Shown here one piece after another: positions 579-11,216 of a DNA stretch of 11,216 bases; position 1 is the stretch's first letter, and each line of letters opens with the position of its first letter. Source of the stretch: Fonticula alba ATCC 38817 (taxonomy: Eukaryota > Protista > Nucleariida); NCBI GenBank assembly GCA_000388065.2, contig KB932221.1; one strand, written 5' to 3'. A program made the translations under genes and the position numbers. The notes under the pieces were generated by a model. It did no database searches. It was given only the letters and a program-made list of their open reading frames with translations, and had not been told where the DNA came from.

Positions 579-708
579 TCGGGCGTGTCCCGGCGGCGCC
601 CGAGAAGTGATGTTGCTACTTGCCTCGACATGCTCGGGCTCTTGGCCGGGCCACGCCATTTGTTTCCTCGGTGTTTACCACTGGCTCGGCACCCTGGCAG
701 CCTCCCAC

Positions 709-715
709 TATAAAA
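709..715 (+). promoter_or_regulatory. TATA box (TATAAAA), probable core promoter of the 11-exon gene; start of transcription expected near 740
   Basis: Perfect TATAAAA in GC-rich flanks, with no ATG between it and the ATG at 877. Confidence 0.55.
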
Positions 716-876
716 GAGGGCCGGCGGGGGAGGCTCTCGAGCAGCGCGAGTGGTGGCCAACGACTCAAGGACATTGAGTGCCTCCTCCCCTGTGCGTATT
801 TTTTGCCCCGAAACTGGCGCATCCTTAGCGACTCTGCGTCCCGTAACCGGACATCCTGCTGTGGCTCGATTGCGCG

Positions 877-1115
877 ATGGAGACTAGCGTGTCGATTTCC
901 CCGCCTTCACGGGTGCTCCGCCTCGGCGAGGTGGAGTTGCACATTGGCCCGAAGCCCTGGCCGGCCGGGCCGCCCCCTCTCGCCGAGGAGGAGGGTGCCT
1001 GGCCGGGACTGCTGCTCGTCGGGGCGCGGCAATTTGCCCGATTGGCCGAGGCCGCGGGCGCGACGCCGAGCGCTTTTCTCTTCCTGGAGGCCGCGGGGCT
1101 GATGCTCCGGGTGCG
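877..1115 (+). CDS. Exon 1 (coding part): METSVSISPP...GLMLRV(R), first half of N-domain repeat 1
   Basis: Lies in ORF 877..1146 and ends at phase-2 donor CG|GTGCGT (1116). Confidence 0.8.
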
Positions 1116-4100
1116 GTGCGTTGTTCGGGCGTGCTTGACCGAGTGAAGGAGGTGAAAAGGAGCGAATGGCCGGGGTGGGGGGGGGGGGCCATGTCGGCAG
1201 GGGAGTGAGCCTGACCCTCGGGCTACTGCCGTGTTTCGCTGCCGCCCCACTGGCCATCGGTTACGTGGATCCTGTGGGGGGCCATGGATGTGGTCGACCC
1301 AGGCCGGACCCACGCGCCGGCCCCCTTGGTCTGCTGTCGGAGGAGTGGGTGCGGCGCCTTTTCCCCCCCGGTCGAGAAGGGATGCTGGAAGTGCGGCACC
1401 TCCAGCCACCGGAATTGGAGGCCGCCTGCTTCGCAGTCCGGTTGGCGGTCGGGGACCAGTCGGTGTCGGCCGGCTCGCAGACCGTTCCCTTTGCATCGGT
1501 CGAGGCCGCGCTCATGGAGGCAGTGGTCGCGCGAGGGAGCCTGCTCCGTGCATCGGATGTACGTTGCCCTCGAGGGAGGGCGGTCGGGGGAGGCAGAAGC
1601 TGTGGAGGGATGTCGCCATGAGCAACGCCCGAAATTGACATGGCCCCCCGGTGGCAGACCTTCCGGTTGGTCATCGACTTGATCGAGCTGGATGTGGCAG
1701 TGACGGAGTTGCGCAGGATTTCTCCTCCGCGGGCAGGGGTCTCCTGCGGCTGGGTGGGCCCTGGGTCCCGGGTTCTGCTGGCCGCCAAGGCCGATGGACG
1801 GGTGGACTTGCTGAATGCGCCGGTCATGGTGACACTATCGGCCCCGGAAGGAGCGCGCCCCGAGAGTGAACTCCACATCCTCTACCCGGACTATCAGCCG
1901 GCCCACAACCTGGATGTGCTGCTGGCATCGGCCGAAGGCCCGGCAGGGCGCGCGCTCCTTGCCTGGCAAGCGGCCTCCGACCTTTCCGGGCTCTATGTGC
2001 GGCATGGGGATCGCGTCTTCCAGGTTCGGTACGGGTTCCTCCTGTCGAGGCATCGTCGCTCCGCCGAGCTCGGGTGTGTACTGATCTGAGCCGCGGCCCA
2101 ACTGGCCCCCCGATGGGGGAGCGGGCGCAGCCTTTGCCCGGGTGCTGGACCCGGAGGAATGGGGCTGCGGGGAGGGCGGCGTCTGCTGGCGTCCATGGCT
2201 CGCCGGGCGCATGGTCGGCCGGTGTCGCTGGCCGTGTGCCGCCCCCCGGCCCCGCTGGCTGTCGTCTGGCTGGAGACCTCTCGGGACATCGAGCAAGTGG
2301 ACCGGAGCTGGCTCCTGGCCGAGCTGGCTGGGGCGCCCCTGCGCGTGGGCCAAGTACGTGCCTGGCGCCATCGTGCCTGTCCGGCGCATGTGTTCCTGAC
2401 ATGAGACATCCCCCTCGGCCGGGAAGATCATTCGGTTTACATCGCCGGCATACTGTGTGCGAGTGGCCCGGCTCATGGACCGGGACTTTGGTGATGTGCC
2501 TTACGGGACGGCCAGCGATGGGCCGTCCGATGATCGGACTCTCGTTTATGTGCAGACGCCGCGCGGTCGGCCGGAGGCCATGCCCCGGCTGGCGTCCATT
2601 ACATCGGGCCCGGGGGAGGAGGCTGTGATGCTGCTGGAACCGGTGGCCGGCCAGGTGGACCATCCGCCGGGAACTCTCTTGGTGTCTGAGCCGGCCTTCC
2701 GGCGCATGGCCGGGCTGGTGGGCCAGGACTCGGGGCCCGTGCGTCTCCAATACCGAGGCATGGTGTTCGATGTGCGGTGCGTGAACATGTCTCGGCATCA
2801 GACGAGTGGGTCCGAGGGGCTTTCGGCACGGCCGCCGGGTTTTCTGACCCAAATGGACTCGTGGCCCAGACCGAGCAAAGGGGTCGCCCGCTTTGCCGTG
2901 GAGACCCACCCGCGGGAATTCATGCTCATGGATGAGCCGGGTCCGTTCACTTTGAGTCCTGCGCCGTGGGTGCCGGTGGCGGCCTGCATGGTGGTGGCCT
3001 TTGCCGCGGCGCCAGGCGAGGTGGCCGGCGCTGGCCGGCCCTCGGGGGACCTTTTGAAGGGCGACTTCCTGGCCACCCACGCCGGGGGGACCATGCAACT
3101 GGGCCGGGTGCGTCGAGGGGGGGGGGGGGGGGCCAGCCGCGTAGTCTGCGTATGTCCGCCTTGTTTTTCCCTCTTGCACTGACCCTGGCCATGGGGCATG
3201 CCGTGTCAGACGCTGCCCTTCGTCTCGGGTGGTCGCCGGATGGTGGCCACTGTGCATCGGCTGACGTGGCCCGGCACGCCGGACACCGAACGACCGGTCG
3301 GCTTGCTGGGCGTGGGGCATCCGCCGCGCGGCGTTCGGGCCAGGCCCCCCTCAGGGCTCGAGACAGACATCGACATGGCGGTGCCGGGGGACCCTGCTCC
3401 GGCAGGGGGCGCTGGCATGCCGGCTCCGGGGGAGGGAGTGTGTGCCACTCGGGGCCAGGTGCGGACCGATACCGAGGTCGAGGTACTTCTCGAGAGGCAG
3501 TCCAGCGACATGGCGGATGGGGCATTTTGCACGCCGCCAGACCATGGCCCTGGGTCTGGGGAAGGCCGTGGGAAGAGTCCAGGCAGGCCACCGGGCCAGC
3601 CCGGCCGCGGCTGGCTACTTGTGTCTCGTCCCGGTCGGGAGTCCGATGCACTGGGAGCCTGTTTGGAAGTGCGGGCCAGTCCGTTGGAAAGATTCCCCCC
3701 TGGCCGGGCGGCCGTCAGTCCGGAGTTCTACCTGCGCATGCGGGAGTGGCTGGCCGATGGGGCCGATGCCTTTCTCCAGTGGGGCGACCATGTCCTGCTG
3801 GTCTAGTACGTGGTGCTCTTTTTTTGGTCCCGTTACCGCGGGTGGCTTGCAGGCGCGCTAACTGGCCCTCGCCGGGGGCTGCCCAGCCCGGATCCCGATC
3901 CCCGCTCGCCGCTGACCGAGGGGCAGATTACCATCAGTCGGTGGGACTTTGGGCGGATGTTTGCGCTGGGGCCGGTGTTTTTGGCCCAGGCGACTGCCCG
4001 GCCTCGGCAGGTGAGCCAGATTGAGTTGCATCTGCTGTCGCCGGTGCCGGGCTGGGAGGGCGAGGAAATCGACCATTCGAATCTGGCACGGGCCTTTTTG

Positions 4101-5966
4101 GACCAACTGGATGGCTCCGTGCTGACGGTGGGCCAGGTGCGTCGGTCACACGGGCTCTCGGCAGGGGTGACACCCTGATACTGATGTATATTGCCATGCC
4201 CGGCGGTGGGGCGGCCGGCCGGGGCATCGCGCGTACGTGCTCGCAGGAGGTGGAGCTGGCGGTGTCGCAGGGGCGCCTGGCGTCGCGGGTAGCCCGACTG
4301 GTGGACGTCCAGCTGCGGCCGATGCCTTGCGGGCTCTTGAGCCACGGCGAGACCTGGGCCTCGGTGTATGTGAGCACGGTGAGGCACGATGTGCGGGTGG
4401 GAAACCCGCCAGCCTCGATCCTGCTGCGGCTGCCCATGCTGACCGAGGCCGTTCGGCTGCCGGTGGCGACCAATGTCAGTCCCATTCACACGGGCCCCGA
4501 TGGGCTCCAGGTGACGGGGGACACCTTGGCCGCCCTGCAGGGCCACTTCCTGGACCGGGACAGTCCGCTTTTTGTCGACAAAACGCTCGAGATTACGTGC
4601 GTTCAGGAGCAGGCCGGATCGTGGTCACGCCGTCACTTTTCCTTTGTTCCTGGACTCGGCCTGGGGGGATGATCGGGAGGCTGGAGGATTAACCGGACAC
4701 ACTGGCACTTGGCCTGGTGGTGGCAATGACACACAGGGCCCTGTCCAATCCCCGGCTTGGGCTCCGGGCCAACCACATCCTCGTCGGAGTGAATGTGCTG
4801 CGTATGATAAACGGGACCCTGCGGCTGACCTGCATCGAGCCGCCCGAGCTGCTTACCCTTTCATGCGAGGTCACCTGGACTGGCTGGTTCGGGGTGCCGG
4901 TGCCGGAGCAGAGCATGCTGGAGGAGTTGCTCCTTCAGGCGGTATCCGGCTCGAATGTCCTTCGAGCACAGCAGGTGCGCATTCGGACGTGCAAAGGGAG
5001 GGGGGGGGATCTGGCCGGGCGTCCTCCTGGTGACAGGGTGGGTGGCGGGGACGGTCGACGCGGAAATGCCTGACTTCACGCCTTTTCCCCGGCTCTCACT
5101 TTGCTCCGGCGGGGACCCGGGGGATGGGTGGGGGGCTCCCCCTGCAGGTGTATCCCGGGCCGCCGGCATCATCGGAGCTGCTGTTCACCATGTCTCGGTT
5201 GGTGGGCGACGACCTGGCAGAGTGGAACCTGGGAACCATGGTCCCGGGGATGACCCGGATTACGTTCACGTCGCTGGAGAATTCCGGGATGGATCTGACA
5301 CCGCGACCGCTGGAGATGTCGCTGCTGTGCGCCATCGGTCGCATGCCGCACCTGCGTGTGGAATTTACCCGGACACCGACGCCGCTGTACCCGGGGATTC
5401 TCCTGCCTCGGGAGGTGCTGCAGTTGGCACGCGAATCGGTGGCCGCCGGCTCGGCCGGAATGATGGATCCCCTGCCGGAGGTCCTATTCTTCGTGTGCCG
5501 AGGACGGGTGTTTGTGGCGCGGCCCTCGGACACGCATGACACCCCGGGGGTGGTGCGCGTTTGCCGGGACTTCGAGAGCTTCCTCGCCCGGGACTCGGGG
5601 GGCATCCTGCACCTGCCGTTTCTCTTCTTCCCCACGCATCTCAGCATCGTCCATATGAGGGTGGCTTTGCTGGGGGCCGGGGGGACGACGGGCGGCTCGG
5701 ACCCGGACGATGAGCCGGTCGACGTCGGCCTGGCCCTGCGCGACCTGAGGAGGGCCATGGAGGCGGCCTTCCCGGACAGCAGCATGGCCGTGTTGGAGCG
5801 GCGCTCCTTTGCCTGTCCCCGGGGGGTGATTGTCTTCACGCCGGAGCTGCTTTGGGACATCCACGGGCAGGTGGTGCCATGTGGGATATTTTGCCCCGGC
5901 GATACGCGAGTGCACTTCCGCCTGAAGGGCATCATCCTGTGTCCGGGCGGGAAGCCGGCCGAATGA
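877..5966 (+). CDS. Predicted 11-exon gene, 1309 aa, six tandem NSF/Sec18(CDC48)-type N-terminal domains, no AAA ATPase domain. join(877..1115,1303..1558,1658..2028,2131..2353,2427..2776,2870..3107,3210..3805,3887..4136,4247..4596,4737..4974,5148..5966)
   Basis: Start ATG in gcgATGg context, 162 nt after TATAAAA. The ten donors are GTGCGT x5, GTACGT x3, GTACGG and GTGCGC. Acceptors are CAG x9 and AAG x1, with branch-like CTGAC/CTAAC/TTAAC/TTGAC/CTGAT upstream. Exon lengths 239,256,371,223,350,238,596,250,350,238,819 sum to 3930 nt, all in frame and stop-free. Spliced repeat 4 reads GQITISRWDFGRMFALGPVFL...QVSQIELHLL...EIDHSNLARAFLDQLDGSVLTVGQ|EVELAV; NSF as I recall it reads [23 protein letters not shown]...CIGTMTIEIDF...[49 protein letters not shown] compares with NSF [21 protein letters not shown]. 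Confidence 0.85.
1303..1558 (+). CDS. Exon 2: PDPRAGPLGL...SLLRASD
   Basis: Acceptor CAG ending 1302 is the first AG after CCTGAC (A1214). Phase-0 donor GAT|GTACGT at 1559. An alternative in-frame CAG ends at 1200 but gives a poorer junction alignment with the other repeats. Confidence 0.75.
1658..2028 (+). CDS. Exon 3: TFRLVIDL...GDRVFQV(R)
   Basis: TTGAC branch-like motif (A1638) with CAG ending 1657; phase-2 donor CG|GTACGG at 2029. Confidence 0.8.
2131..2353 (+). CDS. Exon 4: LCPGAGPGGMGLR...GAPLRVGQ
   Basis: CAG ending 2130 (a GAG ending 2121 is also in frame); phase-0 donor CAA|GTACGT at 2354. Confidence 0.75.
2427..2776 (+). CDS. Exon 5: IIRFTSPAYCVRVARL...GMVFDV(R)
   Basis: CCTGAC (A2399) with AAG ending 2426 (a GAG ending 2405 is also in frame but only 6 nt from the branch A). 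Phase-2 donor CG|GTGCGT at 2777. Length 350 nt, the same as exon 9. Confidence 0.78.
2870..3107 (+). CDS. Exon 6: PSKGVARF...GGTMQLGR
   Basis: TTCTGAC (A2847) with first-AG CAG ending 2869; phase-0 donor CGG|GTGCGT at 3108. Length 238 nt, the same as exon 10. Confidence 0.8.
3117..3132. repeat. G16 homopolymer in intron 6
   Basis: Read directly. Similar runs: G12 at 1177-1188 (intron 1) and G9 at 5000-5008 (intron 10). Confidence 0.9.
3210..3805 (+). CDS. Exon 7: TLPFVSGG...WGDHVLLV(Y), includes Gly/Pro-rich expansions
   Basis: CACTGAC (A3182) with first-AG CAG ending 3209. The phase-2 donor TA|GTACGT at 3806 converts the apparent TAG stop into TAC (Tyr). Confidence 0.8.
3887..4136 (+). CDS. 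Exon 8: PDPDPRSPLTEGQITIS...DGSVLTVGQ
   Basis: GCTAAC (A3861) with first-AG CAG ending 3886; phase-0 donor CAG|GTGCGT at 4137. This is the most NSF-like segment. Confidence 0.85.
4247..4596 (+). CDS. Exon 9: EVELAVSQGRLASRVARL...DKTLEI(T)
   Basis: TACTGAT (A4184) with first-AG CAG ending 4246; phase-2 donor AC|GTGCGT at 4597. Confidence 0.82.
4737..4974 (+). CDS. Exon 10: ALSNPRLGLR...SNVLRAQQ
   Basis: ATTAAC (A4692) with first-AG CAG ending 4736; phase-0 donor CAG|GTGCGC at 4975. Confidence 0.82.
5148..5966 (+). CDS. Exon 11: [18 protein letters not shown]...PGGKPAE*, tail of repeat 5 plus the whole, intronless repeat 6
   Basis: CCTGAC (A5073), a pyrimidine tract, then first-AG CAG ending 5147; TGA at 5964-5966. 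Confidence 0.85.
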   Translation: [272 protein letters not shown]

Positions 5967-6319
5967 GGCCCTGGAACTAAACAAGTTACCCCGATCGTCA
6001 AACAACACGGGCGCCCTGCCTGTGGGCATGCGTCTTCCCCGGGACCGTGGAGGAACGCCGGCACCAACGGCGGTCCAAGCTGTTTGTCCGAGGGGCGGGG
6101 CGCAGATATGGTGAGAGGGAGTCCTTTTGTTTCTTCGCAGCGTGGGGCCTTTGTTCGTTTGGCACTTTCGGTCCTCCTCTGCGTGCGCTGGTGTCTCTTG
6201 ACGACTGTCAATGCATGGCGAAAAGAGGGGCCAGGACGAATGGAAGAGGTCCAGCGCAGGGGGGGTGGGGGGCGCATCGAAGCCGCGTAGGGGTGGATCG
6301 AGATGAAATGCAGATCACC

Positions 6320-6345
6320 GAGAGAGGGAGAGAGAGAAAGAAAGG
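6320..6345. repeat. Pure polypurine (GA-rich) tract
   Basis: gagagagggagagagagaaagaaagg, read directly. Confidence 0.7.
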
Positions 6346-6806
6346 CACGGAGGAAAAGGCAATCTTCCCGAGGGGTGCAGCATCGAACCACAGCCTAAGG
6401 CCGCTGTGCACAAAGAGGCAATGTCGGACATGCGCTCTTTTTGTAGGCATCTCAGTGGCAAACGCACTGTGGCGCCCGTCTCCTAGCAGGATATACAAGC
6501 CAAGTTGTTGACCCCTTCGCGACATGCGGCCGGGATGGCGGCGGCGGCGGCGATGACCAAGCATCCATCACTAGCGGGCGGCAGGAGGTGGCTCTGTGCT
6601 GAGGCTGGGGATTCCAGAGGGAGAGGCCCTTCTGATGGAGCAACAGATGCGGGGCTTGGGGAAGAGGCCGCGAAATGCGAGGGCCGGGCAGGGAGGCGCG
6701 GCCGCTGAGCAGGCCGGACGCGAGTAGGATTCCGTTGGCACTTTAGAACCCCAGCACCCACCCAGAGGACAGTGTCCTTCCCGGGGCACTGGGCGGCAAA
6801 GGGCGG

Positions 6807-6812
6807 AATAAA
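6807..6812 (+). promoter_or_regulatory. Candidate polyadenylation signal AATAAA
   Basis: The AATAAA I found downstream of the stop codon, about 840 nt away. A variant ACTAAA lies at 5976-5981. Whether this organism uses the hexamer is unknown. Confidence 0.25.
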
Positions 6813-6941
6813 ATAAGGTCGACAATATAGAGAGCAGCAGAAGCCGAGGCATGGATGAGCGTTCGGGCCGGCCACGCTGTGGTCGGGTGTGTTTTTGGAT
6901 ACCGTCTCCCCGTGTGCCACGCGGTTGGTACGTGGAATGGG

Positions 6942-7045
6942 TTTTTTTTTTTTTCGTCGCTCCCGCCGAGCGCCTTCTTTTCGAGTATTATCCTGGCGTC
7001 GCCCACCATACCTCGGGGGTGCTAGTGAGGGGGGGGGGGGGGGGG
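6942..7045. repeat. T13 (6942-6954) and G17 (7029-7045) homopolymers
   Basis: Read directly from the sequence. Confidence 0.85.
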
Positions 7046-10000
7046 CGCCTTGCCGGGATCCGGCCTCTTCCTCCCTTGGAGCCTGCATCCCTGAGGCCCT
7101 CGGGGCTGGAACTCCTCGCCGCGTCCCGAGTTCAGCCACTGTACCTCGTGCCTTTGCCGGGGCTTCGGGAGGTAGGTCACACTCCCGGTGGCAGGCAGCG
7201 CAGCACCTCAACGGCGGTGCCGGGGCTCGTGGCACACGCCCTCCCCCCTGCCCTCGGCCGCACTGGGGCCGTAGATTTGCTCGCGGCCGGCCTTTGTTGC
7301 CTCTGCATTGGTCTATTCCTTGAAGGGCAGTGACGTGCGGTGCATCCGCCCTTCTCCGGAAGGGAGAGGGGCACTCTTTCTCCCGGAGACGCAGTCTTCC
7401 TCCAATATCGCGTAGCGGGCTTGGGATGGATGCTAACATGCGTATGTATCAGTCAAGATGCTGACTGGCCTTGGATCGGTGGGCTCGACTACGCGGACTG
7501 GATGGGGCAACTACAGGCAGTGTCTGGTCCCCGGTGACAAGGCTTTCCTTTTTGCTTGAGATGCCGGTCCCTAGCAGGGCGTCTATGTGTGCCATGTGTG
7601 GGCAGGGCGGCGTTGATCGTGAAGATCTGGGTGGCACTTTGTGTGGGGTACCAGGGGCTTCGGCGACAGCCGTGGAGGGATGCTGCGTACGCCGGGGCGA
7701 GCAAAGTTGCCCCGCTCAAGGAGGAGCGTGTCGAGCGCGTGCGGGACCTCCGAGCCAAGCAACATCACCGGCTGCAAGGGTGCCCCTGCCGCCCGGCGCT
7801 CGTGGATCGGTCGGCGCTGCGAAACAGATGCAAGCCCTATGGCCCCTCACTCGCCTATGGGATTGGGTCGGACATACATTCCCACGTCTACAAAGGCGCC
7901 GGAGTGATGGTGAGGCCTCCTGGTTCCCAGGCGAAGCGGGGGCACATTCGACCACCCGGCAAGAGAGTTGTTGGTTGTCCTGCCGGCGAGGCCTTTCCTC
8001 TGCATGGGAGGCCGCCAATGCCCCACACTAAGTTGAGATGTCCAGCTGTCGTTTGAGGTCGTTGGCCGTAGTGTACAGTGGACGGACCGGGGCCTCGCTG
8101 TGGTATGTCGTCGACATGATGTCCGGTTGGTGAGCATGTCATTGCCCCAATCGGAAAGCATCTAGGGCCTTTGTCTTGGCATCTGCCTGGGTGGCCATTT
8201 GGACAAGTTGCTCATCCTGTATCTGGACCTCTCTCGAGTCAGCCTCAGCTCGAGTAGGGGTCGTGGAGTGCTCAGTCAGCTTTGCTCGGGGAACTCACGC
8301 CATGAGTCCTCCGGGGAGGGGGACATGTTCTATCGGTAGGCTAAGCGGCTGTGGAAAATAGTTCAGTGAGGGGCGTCCTCGGCCGCCACTGTCTCTCTTC
8401 CCGGGGAATTGCGATCGAGGTGACTACTGCTAGGCCAGCCCTACAGCGTGCAAGAAATACAGGCTGCTGCATGGCGAGATTTGCTATTAAGTAGAGGTAG
8501 ATATTGAGCTTATGGTTATGGTTGGGGATTGACAAGAGGACAGCATGTACATGGGGATAGGAATACCGGCTTAGGATGCGTCTGTGGCGTGGGGCCTCCT
8601 ATGCCTGGCTTGCTGAGGTGTCTAGGTCATTGCTCCGAAGGAATGTGGCCGAGGTGCTGTGTCGTTTGGTGGGGAGTGTGGGTGCAGCTTAAAAAAAAGC
8701 ATGGGTGATGCAGGAAGCGTGCCCTTCGGGCGCACTTTCAGTCAGTAAGTGAGGGCACCGCATGTCGGGGTCGTACAGCAGGAGCTCCCCTTTCGAGGAC
8801 AATCCGCCGCGAAATGTGGGGCTGAGGTCACTGCGAGCAACTTTTCAATGCCGTGGTCACAGTGCGCCCCATTTTGGCAGATAGGTCCAGATTGGCCCTC
8901 TCTCTATAAGTCGGGCACTTCGGCAGATTCCACACACAAGGAACGGATTTGAGCGACCCTGCCCGGGCATGGGAGAGCCATTTTCGTAAGGGAGACAGCC
9001 AAGATGCGGAAGTCGAGGCATGATCGAGAAGGCGTAGCTCGAGCATCTCTATGTTGTAAAGGCGTATGCAAGCTGGATTTTCGCCTGGGGTCGACGTATC
9101 GCTTTCTGACCTGTGTGTAGCATGAACTAGGGCCTACTCGGGGATTAATTGATGACAATGGACACGGAAGGGGGCCGAAGTCTCGTGCTGTGACAGGGCG
9201 ACGCTTGGGCAGCAGAAAAATGAGTTTGCTGTAGAAGATCGGCGATTGCCGGCAGTAGGCTGACCGAAGGGGTTGGGTTGAAATGCGGGACATGCTGTCA
9301 CTGGCGGAATGAAGAGGGCGCTTGGCATTATTCAGGGCGCGCCGATGAGTCAATGTCTCAGCCCTGCTGGGGCATGGTTTGATCCTACATTCCGCGACCC
9401 CCGAATATCGAAGGGTCTTGGTAAAGAGGTCACCCTCTGATGGGCGATCATCGGGATGCTATGTGGCAAGCCATTCCTGCAATGGCCGGAGTGTCTCTGC
9501 TCGAGGTGGGACTCGGGGTGAGGGGGCGGGCGGGACGCGCCGAAGGCATGGGTGGTCCCTGGAGGCGGGAGTCAGTGTATGATGACGAGCAATGTCAAGG
9601 GCGCGGCCGCTCGAGCGGAAGATGCCTCGCCGCCACTCAAGTTAAGCGGACTGGGCGCTAATCTCGCGCGGCTGGCTCCATGCTGTTGGCGTAGCATGCG
9701 TGGAGAACCGGGTGGAGGTACATCATGGTAATCCGGGATGCTGTTTACGCCACAGTGCTCTGTGAAGCGGTGCTCAACGCTGGGACACATGTGCAAGTCC
9801 CATTGGGGGGTACATTTCGCTAGGGCGTCACGAGGCATGGCTCTTCGTTTATGTCGACCATCGCCAGCGGGGAGGTGTTGTCACAGCCACGTCTGGGTGA
9901 GGCTGGGCGCGGCAGGGCGTAGAGCTATGCCAGTGAGACACTGGGAGCGGCATGTCGGGGTAGTTGGCAACATGAAGACCATGGGGAGCGATCTCCTGCC

Positions 10001-11216
10001 CGGGCGGAGGGCATCGGGAAGCTGTCGCTGGAGCAGGTTTTGTTGCCAGGCTCGCCGGTGCAAGGATCCACAGGAGCTAGGTCCGGTTGGGAGGTGGCCG
10101 AAGCTTGCGATGCGGGATGTGCCGAGCCGACACAAGTGTTGGCAGAACTACGTCTTTGGTAAGCAGGAAGACCACCAGGCGTGCATACTCCTGCTGTGGC
10201 TGAGTGCCGCGTGGGGGGATTCGTCGAGGGAGCTGGCTGGCCAGGCGCATCTGCGGCGGATGGCTCATGAGGTCGGAGGCATCGGCGATCGCAGCAAACA
10301 TCGGCCGGTGCCTGGATAAGGTGTCACCCAGGCATCGCCGGATCTGTCAGGAGTGCGCCGTCGTCGTGTGGGCGCTCGAGGCGGAGGCGGGGGCGGGGGA
10401 GGGGGCCGATGCTCGGGCGTGGTATTGGGTGTCAATCGACTGGGGCCTCTCGGGAAGTGTCGGATGACGGGCGACACACGGGCCAGAATAGCAGGACCGG
10501 GGAGGGAGAGAAATTGTGTGCAAAATGTCGTGCATGTGTTTGATGAGCGAATGTAGGTACAGGGATGGGTGAATGGGTGTGACCTTGGGGAGGGAGTGCG
10601 GCGGAAGCAGTGAGAGGCAGTGCCCGGGGTCGAGGAAGGCGCGAGGGTAAGGTGTGAAGTAGGGACACGTATGCCAGCGGGCATGTCCGCGTGACCAGTT
10701 TGTGGAATCCGGGGCCACCGCGGTAGTAGGCGGGCTAGGAGGATGTGGCAAGTGGGAGGGGGCAGGCGGGCGCGGAGAGGGCGGGCATGGGGATCCTAGG
10801 CGGGGTGAAAAGTGCGCGGAGGGGTGGCTGTCGGGGCTTTGAAGTGGCGGTAGGAGGGGCCTCAGCGAGCGTGCGTGTGTATCAGAATCAATTGGGGTCC
10901 AGTAGAACGAGGATAATAGAGAAATTGGAGTAAAAAGCCGCGGCGGGGATATCGCCAAAATCCCGAACTCTGAGCGAGCGAATGCGCCAGAGCGGCGCCG
11001 AACGCTGTTGGAAAAACACATATTCTCAGAACATCTCCCTTCAATTATCAGAATGCGTAATCCGCGTGACGCGAAAAAGGGAATTAAAAGTGGAAAAAAG
11101 TGCGGAGAGGCGAATGTCGCCGGAAGGAGGCAAAAAGAGGTGAGAAAAAGACTCCTGGCCGCTTGGGCCACATCGGCGGTTGACGAAGTGGCCTTCCGCG
11201 ACGTCACTCGGCTGAC

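What the first reader, a model, noticed from the sequence alone, without database searches (positions are those of the whole stretch)
877..5966. Six N-domains on one chain match the N-domain count of an NSF hexamer: possible ATP-independent SNAP/SNARE binder or decoy
Established: NSF works as a homohexamer whose N-domains use a basic surface (including the RK of LPQRKW) to engage alpha-SNAP on SNARE complexes. Seen: the repeat number is six. At the position aligned by eye to that RK, R1 has WVRRLF, R2 GGRRLL, R4 FGRMF and R5 VLRMI, while R3 (HPREFM) and R6 (RDFESFL) are more acidic. Inference: the protein could act as a multivalent scaffold, a competitor of NSF-driven SNARE disassembly, or an adaptor platform with diversified partners. 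The number six may be coincidental.
Basis: inference. Interest (0 to 1): 0.72.

Follow-up and report, generated by a model that had tools for sequence, protein, structure and literature searches.

The report
Motor-less chain of six N-domains
This expressed gene of the amoeba Fonticula alba encodes a protein made only of six diverged copies of the two-lobed "adaptor-grabbing" N-domain that normally fronts NSF/Cdc48/Pex1 motors, with no motor attached; nothing supports the proposed SNAP/SNARE-decoy role.

Summary
Observation confirmed. cDNA-type contigs give ten GT..AG introns, so window 877-5966 (+) is an 11-exon gene with one open frame of 1309 aa. It consists of six homologous units of about 190-250 aa. 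Profile-profile alignments are in register and link all six, and the two intron positions recur in units 1-5.

The only relatives among 1.84 billion representatives are Fonticula alba hypothetical proteins. At least ten colinear loci exist, several in tandem pairs. The six-unit array is older than the gene family.

The SNAP/SNARE-decoy reading has no support. The helix aligned to NSF's "RK" is not conserved as basic, and the units carry net charge -7 to +3. The most likely role is an ATP-independent multivalent adaptor scaffold with six non-equivalent modules; this is inference.

The scan had already noted two apparent paralogues on other DNA of this genome.

The parts
877..5966 (+). Whole coding region: 11 exons, 1309 aa plus stop. 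Exons are 877-1115, 1303-1558, 1658-2028, 2131-2353, 2427-2776, 2870-3107, 3210-3805, 3887-4136, 4247-4596, 4737-4974 and 5148-5966.
   Evidence: Ten GT..AG joints in spliced contigs of X1 and X3. The joined frame is open, and phases alternate 2/0. ATG 877 is inferred, because there is no RNA cover at 877-1037.
877..1798 (+). Unit 1 (aa 1-212, introns included): N-domain-like. The RK-equivalent string WVRRLF is at 1346-1363.
   Evidence: Profile of unit 1 against unit 3: E 3e-5 over 162 columns. Against unit 4: E 5e-5 over 155 columns. Unit-1 sequences form a group with 100/99 support in the tree.
1799..2573 (+). Unit 2 (aa 213-412). GGRRLL is at 2171-2188.
   Evidence: hhalign of U2 against U4: probability 90%, E 2e-6. 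Tree group support 100/99.
2574..3512 (+). Unit 3 (aa 413-660). HPREFM is at 2907-2924. The G/P-rich linker runs from about aa 590 inside this unit's span to aa 689 (window 3599).
   Evidence: hhalign of U3 against U6: 89%, E 2e-6 over 148 columns. U3 against U4: 75% over 164 columns.
3600..4402 (+). Unit 4 (aa 690-893). FGRMF is at 3948-3962.
   Evidence: hhalign of U4 against U5: 95.6%, E 1e-8 over 149 columns. Tree group support 97/93.
4403..5282 (+). Unit 5 (aa 894-1082). VLRMI is at 4795-4809.
   Evidence: hhalign of U5 against U6: 88%, E 3e-6. U4 against U5: 95.6%.
5283..5963 (+). Unit 6 (aa 1083-1309), contained in the single exon 11. RDFESFL at 5565-5585 is helix 95-101 of the model.

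Best explanation
Window 877-5966 is an expressed, spliced Fonticula alba gene. Its 1309-aa product is a string of six homologous but strongly diverged N-domains of the type-II AAA+ kind. Each unit is a double-psi beta-barrel followed by an alpha/beta roll. There is no ATPase, no other recognisable domain, no signal peptide and no membrane segment.

The array arose by tandem duplication of a two-exon genomic cassette, before the gene itself multiplied to at least ten colinear copies in this species. That much is shown, with the fold itself demonstrated for unit 6 only.

How it works is inferred. In NSF, p97/Cdc48, Pex1/Pex6, UFD1 and DEPDC5 this fold is a docking module for adaptors, peptides or ubiquitin-like folds. 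Here each position (U1 to U6) is conserved across paralogues but differs from the other five. So the protein most likely acts as a cytosolic, ATP-independent, multivalent scaffold that holds up to six different partners, or several sites of one partner, on one flexible chain. The partners are unknown.
For: Gene model and expression: ten GT..AG joints in cDNA-type contigs from two samples of one study and one open 1309-aa frame.

Six homologous units: in-register profile-profile alignments, the colinear alignment A5, and recurring intron positions and phases.

No ATPase: Pfam is blank, no Walker A motif occurs in any frame, and the paralogues also end just after unit 6.

Position-specific conservation: 27-48% identity at the same position against 14-20% across positions. 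Five of the six unit classes form a supported group; unit 5 does too once the long-branch P0008 row is set aside.

The adaptor-binding role of N-domains comes from published reviews (PMC9265785, PMC11532144).
Against: No partner, binding site or localisation was tested. Only unit 6 was folded; the fold of units 1-5 rests on homology. No conserved surface patch was mapped.

The family is species-restricted and fast-evolving, so it might have a structural, self-assembling or even dispensable role. The 5' end of the transcript is not covered by RNA, so an upstream exon cannot be excluded. Two raw RNA-seq runs labelled with the same species gave no reads.
Confidence: 0.6

Rival explanations
1. One reading: the six N-domains mimic the N-domain crown of an NSF hexamer. 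They bind alpha-SNAP/Sec17 on SNARE complexes without ATP and act as a decoy or competitor of SNARE disassembly.
For: NSF-N is the single best structural match in both searches. The unit number equals the number of NSF protomers and is fixed in all paralogues. An isolated NSF N-domain does not bind the SNAP-SNARE complex (review PMC11532144), so avidity could matter.
Against: NSF binds alpha-SNAP through R10, R67, K68 and K104 (PMC11532144). At the helix aligned to R67/K68 a basic pair occurs only in units 1 and 2 of this one copy and is lost in the paralogues. Units 3 and 6 are acidic there, and all units have net charge -7 to +3. NSF leads DEPDC5, Sec18 and PEX1 by only 1-2 Z. No sequence similarity to NSF was found. 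A species-restricted family of ten fast-diverging copies fits poorly with a regulator of a universal machine.
Confidence: 0.04
2. A Cdc48/p97-pathway protein. The units bind ubiquitin or ubiquitin-like folds (as UFD1-N and p97-N do), or SHP/VIM/UBX-type motifs. The chain would be a multivalent ubiquitin or cofactor receptor, or a cofactor sponge.
Against: The matches are weaker than to NSF, DEPDC5 and PEX1. The Pfam hit is not significant. Cleft residues could not be compared.
Confidence: 0.12
3. The array has no ligand-docking role. Either it is a self-assembling or structural protein, for example the six domains packing into a closed pseudo-ring, or it belongs to a fast-evolving, dispensable lineage-specific expansion.
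For: Relatives exist only in one species. Copies lie in tandem pairs and differ by about 60%. The residues conserved between units look like core positions.
Against: Open frames are kept across 11 exons and in at least ten loci. Transcripts are spliced. Conservation is position-specific at all six positions, which argues for maintained, non-equivalent functions.
Confidence: 0.15

Closest known systems
NSF / Sec18 N-terminal domain (PDB 1QDN, 1QCS, 1CR5)
   Different: No D1/D2 ATPase, so no hexameric motor. There are six domains on one chain rather than one per protomer. Identity is 8-12% and no HMM-level similarity was found. The basic alpha-SNAP-binding residues are not conserved.
Pex1 / Pex6 (tandem N1-N2 domains before the ATPase rings)
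   Different: Pex1 and Pex6 have two N-domains followed by two ATPase domains. Here there are six and no ATPase.
UFD1 and DEPDC5/Iml1 N-terminal domains
   Different: Each carries a single N-domain joined to other domains, and both are conserved across eukaryotes. No Pfam UFD1 or IML1 match occurs here.
p97/Cdc48/VAT N-domain
   Different: No ATPase. CDC48_N and CDC48_2 are not detected at significant E-values.

Membership tests
Type-II AAA+ N-domain fold (Cdc48/NSF/PEX1-type) | N-terminal double-psi beta-barrel subdomain | tested here: met
Type-II AAA+ N-domain fold (Cdc48/NSF/PEX1-type) | C-terminal alpha/beta roll (beta-clam) subdomain directly after the barrel | tested here: met
   Full-domain alignments: 167 of 189 residues of 1qdn_A; 148-159 residues of PEX1, Pex6, Cdc48 and UFD1. 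PH1500-N hits fall on residues 118-227.
Type-II AAA+ N-domain fold (Cdc48/NSF/PEX1-type) | Sequence-level match to the curated families (CDC48_N, CDC48_2, PEX-1N, UFD1, IML1) | tested here: not met
   Pfam found nothing at E<=1 on the exons or on seven paralogues. The best result is one unit with CDC48_2 at E 0.19. PDB sequence and profile searches were blank for these families.
NSF/Sec18 (SNARE-disassembly ATPase) | D1 and D2 AAA+ ATPase domains that form a hexamer | tested here: not met
   No AAA domain in Pfam. No Walker A motif in any frame of the window. The protein and its paralogues end after unit 6.
NSF/Sec18 (SNARE-disassembly ATPase) | Basic alpha-SNAP-binding residues (R10, R67, K68, K104; PMC11532144) | tested here: inconclusive
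   At the equivalent helix, basic residues are not conserved between units or paralogues, and units are net acidic to neutral. No residue-level structural alignment was available.
NSF/Sec18 (SNARE-disassembly ATPase) | Binding of alpha-SNAP/Sec17-SNARE complexes | not testable with these tools
   This needs multimer modelling or biochemistry.
Pex1/Pex6-type tandem N-domains | Two N-domains in tandem followed by D1-D2 ATPase rings | tested here: not met
   The tandem arrangement is present, with six units, but no ATPase follows.
Fonticula alba six-N-domain family (H696_06118, 06122, 06123+06124, 05766, 04153, 05299, 05952 and neighbouring copies) | Colinear U1-U6 architecture with shared intron positions and about 30-45% identity | tested here: met
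   phmmer E 1e-39 to 1e-7. Full-length colinear alignment. tblastn hit boundaries in the loci coincide with the window's exon ends. The window's units nest inside each unit class in the tree.

The most novel reading that the evidence does not exclude
A single polypeptide carries a complete set of six N-domains. It would work as an ATP-free pseudo-hexameric mimic of the adaptor-binding crown of an AAA+ unfoldase (NSF, Cdc48 or Pex1/6). It would capture the motor's adaptors or substrates with hexamer-like avidity, and so tune or block that motor. This would be a new class of AAA+ regulator, invented and then diversified into about ten variants in one protist lineage.
Probability: 0.07. Interest if true: 0.8.

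Novelty: new variant of a known kind. Interest (0 to 1): 0.45.

Why it matters
The N-domain is known as the adaptor-docking front end of NSF, Cdc48/p97 and Pex1/6. It also occurs as a single module in UFD1 and DEPDC5.

A protein made of nothing but six such modules, conserved in number and order across a gene family, is a layout I did not find in the few papers I read (two targeted searches). All members carry only "hypothetical protein" names apart from one automatic UniRef name on P0001.

It shows the fold can be used as a free-standing repeat scaffold. It offers six natural, highly diverged versions of one fold for studying what N-domains recognise. It also corrects several split or missing gene models in the Fonticula alba annotation.

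Its weight is limited. It is confined to one little-studied organism, and no function is yet attached.

Tried and rejected
- Pfam on raw ORF pieces, on seven paralogues and on all 29 units found nothing significant.
- PDB sequence searches with exon 11 and with three repeat profiles gave no relevant hit.
- The protein-language Atlas search with exon 11 gave only weak unnamed hits.
- Single-sequence AF2 of exon 11 was unusable, pLDDT 38.9.
- Self-BLASTP of the joined protein gave no hits. Pairwise Smith-Waterman and leave-one-out HMM tests were only partly significant. Paralogue profiles were needed.
- A word-index profile search with alignment A3 saturated at 8000 candidates and returned only the first query sequence (P0007), so it says nothing about absence.
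- A two-domain alignment (A4) was rejected as fold input, because MAFFT split single units between domains 5 and 6.
- Raw RNA-seq runs X12 and X13 gave no real reads, only poly-G artefacts.
- My first domain boundaries were wrong. The strand I first took as the opening strand of each next unit is the closing strand of the previous N-domain. This was corrected.
- A second paralogue downstream in the window was looked for and not found. There is no DNA-level tandem repeat.
- The SNAP/SNARE-decoy reading was considered and rated low.

Full report
GENE MODEL

The window is 63-70% G+C across the gene and has no long bacterial-style ORF over 877-5966. Laying public runs on 650-6450 showed that X1 and X3 hold spliced contigs. 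These are small 2012 runs from two samples of one study. The contigs carry ten joints, all GT..AG.

Joined in a script, the 11 exons give 3930 nt and one open frame of 1309 aa ending at 5966. The exons are 877-1115, 1303-1558, 1658-2028, 2131-2353, 2427-2776, 2870-3107, 3210-3805, 3887-4136, 4247-4596, 4737-4974 and 5148-5966.

Positions 877-1037 have no RNA cover, so the start codon is inferred. It sits ten residues before the first strand of unit 1, and an in-frame stop lies at 844-846. Two raw RNA-seq runs with the same species label gave only poly-G artefacts.

It was used only inside scripts. All searches used single exons by reference or database paralogues.

RELATIVES AND ORGANISM

Exon 11 (272 aa) was scored with phmmer against 1.84 billion representative proteins. 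Seven true relatives came back (E 3e-39 to 2e-7), plus one Sushi-repeat false hit. All seven are Fonticula alba "hypothetical proteins": H696_06122, 06118, 06124, 05299, 05766, 04153 and 05952. This fits the organism named in earlier notes of the scan.

The window's own protein is not in that library, so the gene appears to be unannotated there. None of the paralogues has a Pfam domain at E<=1.

The paralogues align colinearly with the window protein over their whole length. tblastn of the window protein on five of the six genomic loci fetched shows nine colinear copies. With the more distant P0008 locus, which gave no tblastn hit, and the window itself, the family has at least ten copies.
- Tandem pairs lie on KB932219 (L001), KB932213 (L002) and KB932206 (L003).
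- Two copies are split into two annotated genes each (H696_06123+06124; a 630-aa gene plus H696_05299).
- Hit boundaries coincide with the window's exon ends.

Only one copy lies in the window.

THE REPEATS

Inside the single protein the repeat is almost invisible.
- Self-BLASTP gives no hit.
- Smith-Waterman z-scores reach 3-5 for five unit pairs only.
- A leave-one-out HMM recognises four of the six units.

With profiles built from paralogues the picture is clear:

| Pair | Probability | E-value | Columns |
|---|---|---|---|
| U4-U5 | 95.6% | 1e-8 | 149 |
| U3-U6 | 89% | 2e-6 | 148 |
| U5-U6 | 88% | 3e-6 | 109 |
| U2-U4 | 90% | 2e-6 | 62 |
| U3-U4 | 75% | 3e-5 | 164 |
| U1-U3 | 73% | 3e-5 | 162 |
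| U1-U4 | 67% | 5e-5 | 155 |

All are in register. The U1 rows use a profile improved with unannotated upstream exons of paralogues.

A 29-row alignment of units 2-6 is colinear over about 200 columns. Introns recur at two fixed positions: phase 2 just after barrel strand 4, and phase 0 after the "VGQ" of the second lobe. This holds in units 1-5, while unit 6 has no intron. That pattern records duplication of a two-exon cassette.

Units at the same position in different paralogues are 27-48% identical. Units at different positions are 14-20% identical. In a maximum-likelihood tree five of the six classes form one group: U1 100/99, U2 100/99, U4 97/93, U6 99/98 and U3 87/88. U5 forms a group at 100/99 once the long-branch P0008 row is set aside. 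So the six-unit array predates the gene family, and the number six is fixed in it by descent.

THE FOLD

Unit 6 is the only unit contained in one exon (window 5283-5963). With alignment A5 as input, template-free AF2 gave pLDDT 86.8 and pTM 0.83, and all five models scored about 86. The single-sequence model had scored 38.9.

Foldseek against the PDB put the NSF N-domain in the first 36 places (1qdn_A E 3e-8, 1qcs). p97-N and Sec18 followed.

|---|---|
| NSF-N 1qdn_A (167 of 189 residues aligned) | 9.5 |
| DEPDC5 N-terminal domain | 8.3 and 8.1 |
| Sec18-N | 8.1 |
| PEX1-N | 7.9 |
| Pex6 N1 | 7.2 |
| CDC48A-N | 7.2 |
| UFD1 | 6.3 |
| VAT-N | 5.0 |

Barrel-only matches fell on residues 20-115, and PH1500-N matches on 118-227. 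The ESM Atlas returned NSF, CDC48, UFD1 and IML1 clusters.

The unit is therefore a genuine two-lobed N-domain. NSF is the nearest structure, but only by 1-2 Z units. There is no HMM-level similarity to any of these families. No Walker A motif occurs in any frame of the window. No other domain, signal peptide or convincing membrane segment is present. The highest hydropathy peak is a conserved strand of unit 3.

According to a review citing the 20S structure, NSF-N contacts alpha-SNAP through R10, R67, K68 and K104, and the isolated N-domain does not bind the SNAP-SNARE complex (PMC11532144).

In unit 6, RDFESFL is exactly the helix after strand 5. They are not conserved as basic, however.
- The Arg-Arg pairs of units 1 and 2 are not kept as pairs in the paralogues; unit 2 keeps a single basic residue there.
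- Units 4 and 5 keep one Arg in most copies.
- Units 3 and 6 are acidic or histidine-rich there.
- Net charge per unit runs from -7 to +3.

I could not obtain a residue-level superposition on NSF, so this test is approximate. Taken with the species-restricted, expanding and fast-diverging nature of the family, the SNAP/SNARE-decoy reading is unsupported. I put it at about 4%.

MOST LIKELY MECHANISM (INFERENCE)

N-domains of NSF, p97, Pex1/6 and related proteins dock adaptors and substrates, often in the cleft between the two lobes (PMC9265785). Here six non-equivalent versions, each conserved at its own position, are strung on one chain, with a long G/P-rich linker between units 3 and 4.

The best-supported reading is a cytosolic, ATP-independent, multivalent adaptor scaffold. 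The rivals are a Cdc48/ubiquitin-pathway receptor, a structural or self-assembling protein, and the NSF decoy.

NOVELTY

The fold is known. So are tandem N-domains (two in Pex1/6) and ATPase-less N-domains (UFD1, DEPDC5). A six-fold, ATPase-free array as a gene family is not described in the papers I read, and all members carry only "hypothetical protein" names apart from one automatic UniRef name on P0001.

The scan had already met this family on other DNA of the same genome. One follow-up reached the same reading and one left the fold unproven. Their stretch lengths (4599 and 4519 letters) match the loci of P0003 and P0005. My fold evidence is independent of those reports.

Noticed in passing
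window 1168 (intron 1, beside the G-run at about 1172-1187): One contig each in X1 and X3 reads into 1168 from 255 nt that match nothing in the window. This may be an alternative 5' exon outside the window, or an assembly chimera through the G-rich stretch. No AG precedes 1168.
   Followed up: partly
window 3132 (intron 6): Reads of the raw RNA-seq run X12, and the contigs, end here in long poly-G tails. This looks like a sequencing or assembly artefact at a G-run, not expression.
   Followed up: no
L001:18151-23160, L004:5252-10248, L003:5764-6000: Public gene models of paralogues look wrong. H696_06123 and H696_06124 are one colinear six-unit gene. A 630-aa gene and H696_05299 are another. 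H696_04153 has a unit-1 exon upstream of its annotated start. The window's own gene is absent from the protein libraries.
   Followed up: partly
L001, L002, L003: Paralogues lie in head-to-tail tandem pairs on three contigs. Several family loci have neighbouring genes for large cysteine-rich (VSP or furin-like), FG-GAP and growth-factor-receptor-like proteins.
   Followed up: no
window 5967-11216: The 5.2 kb downstream of the gene has no ORF with a Pfam match and no tandem repeat. GC skew rises to +0.35 near 10000-11000.
   Followed up: partly
ESM Atlas row 4: A chlorophyte cluster of 500-aa cytochrome-b5 proteins matches the unit-6 model best by query TM-score (0.57, 193 residues aligned). 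This may be another ATPase-less context for the N-domain fold.
   Followed up: no
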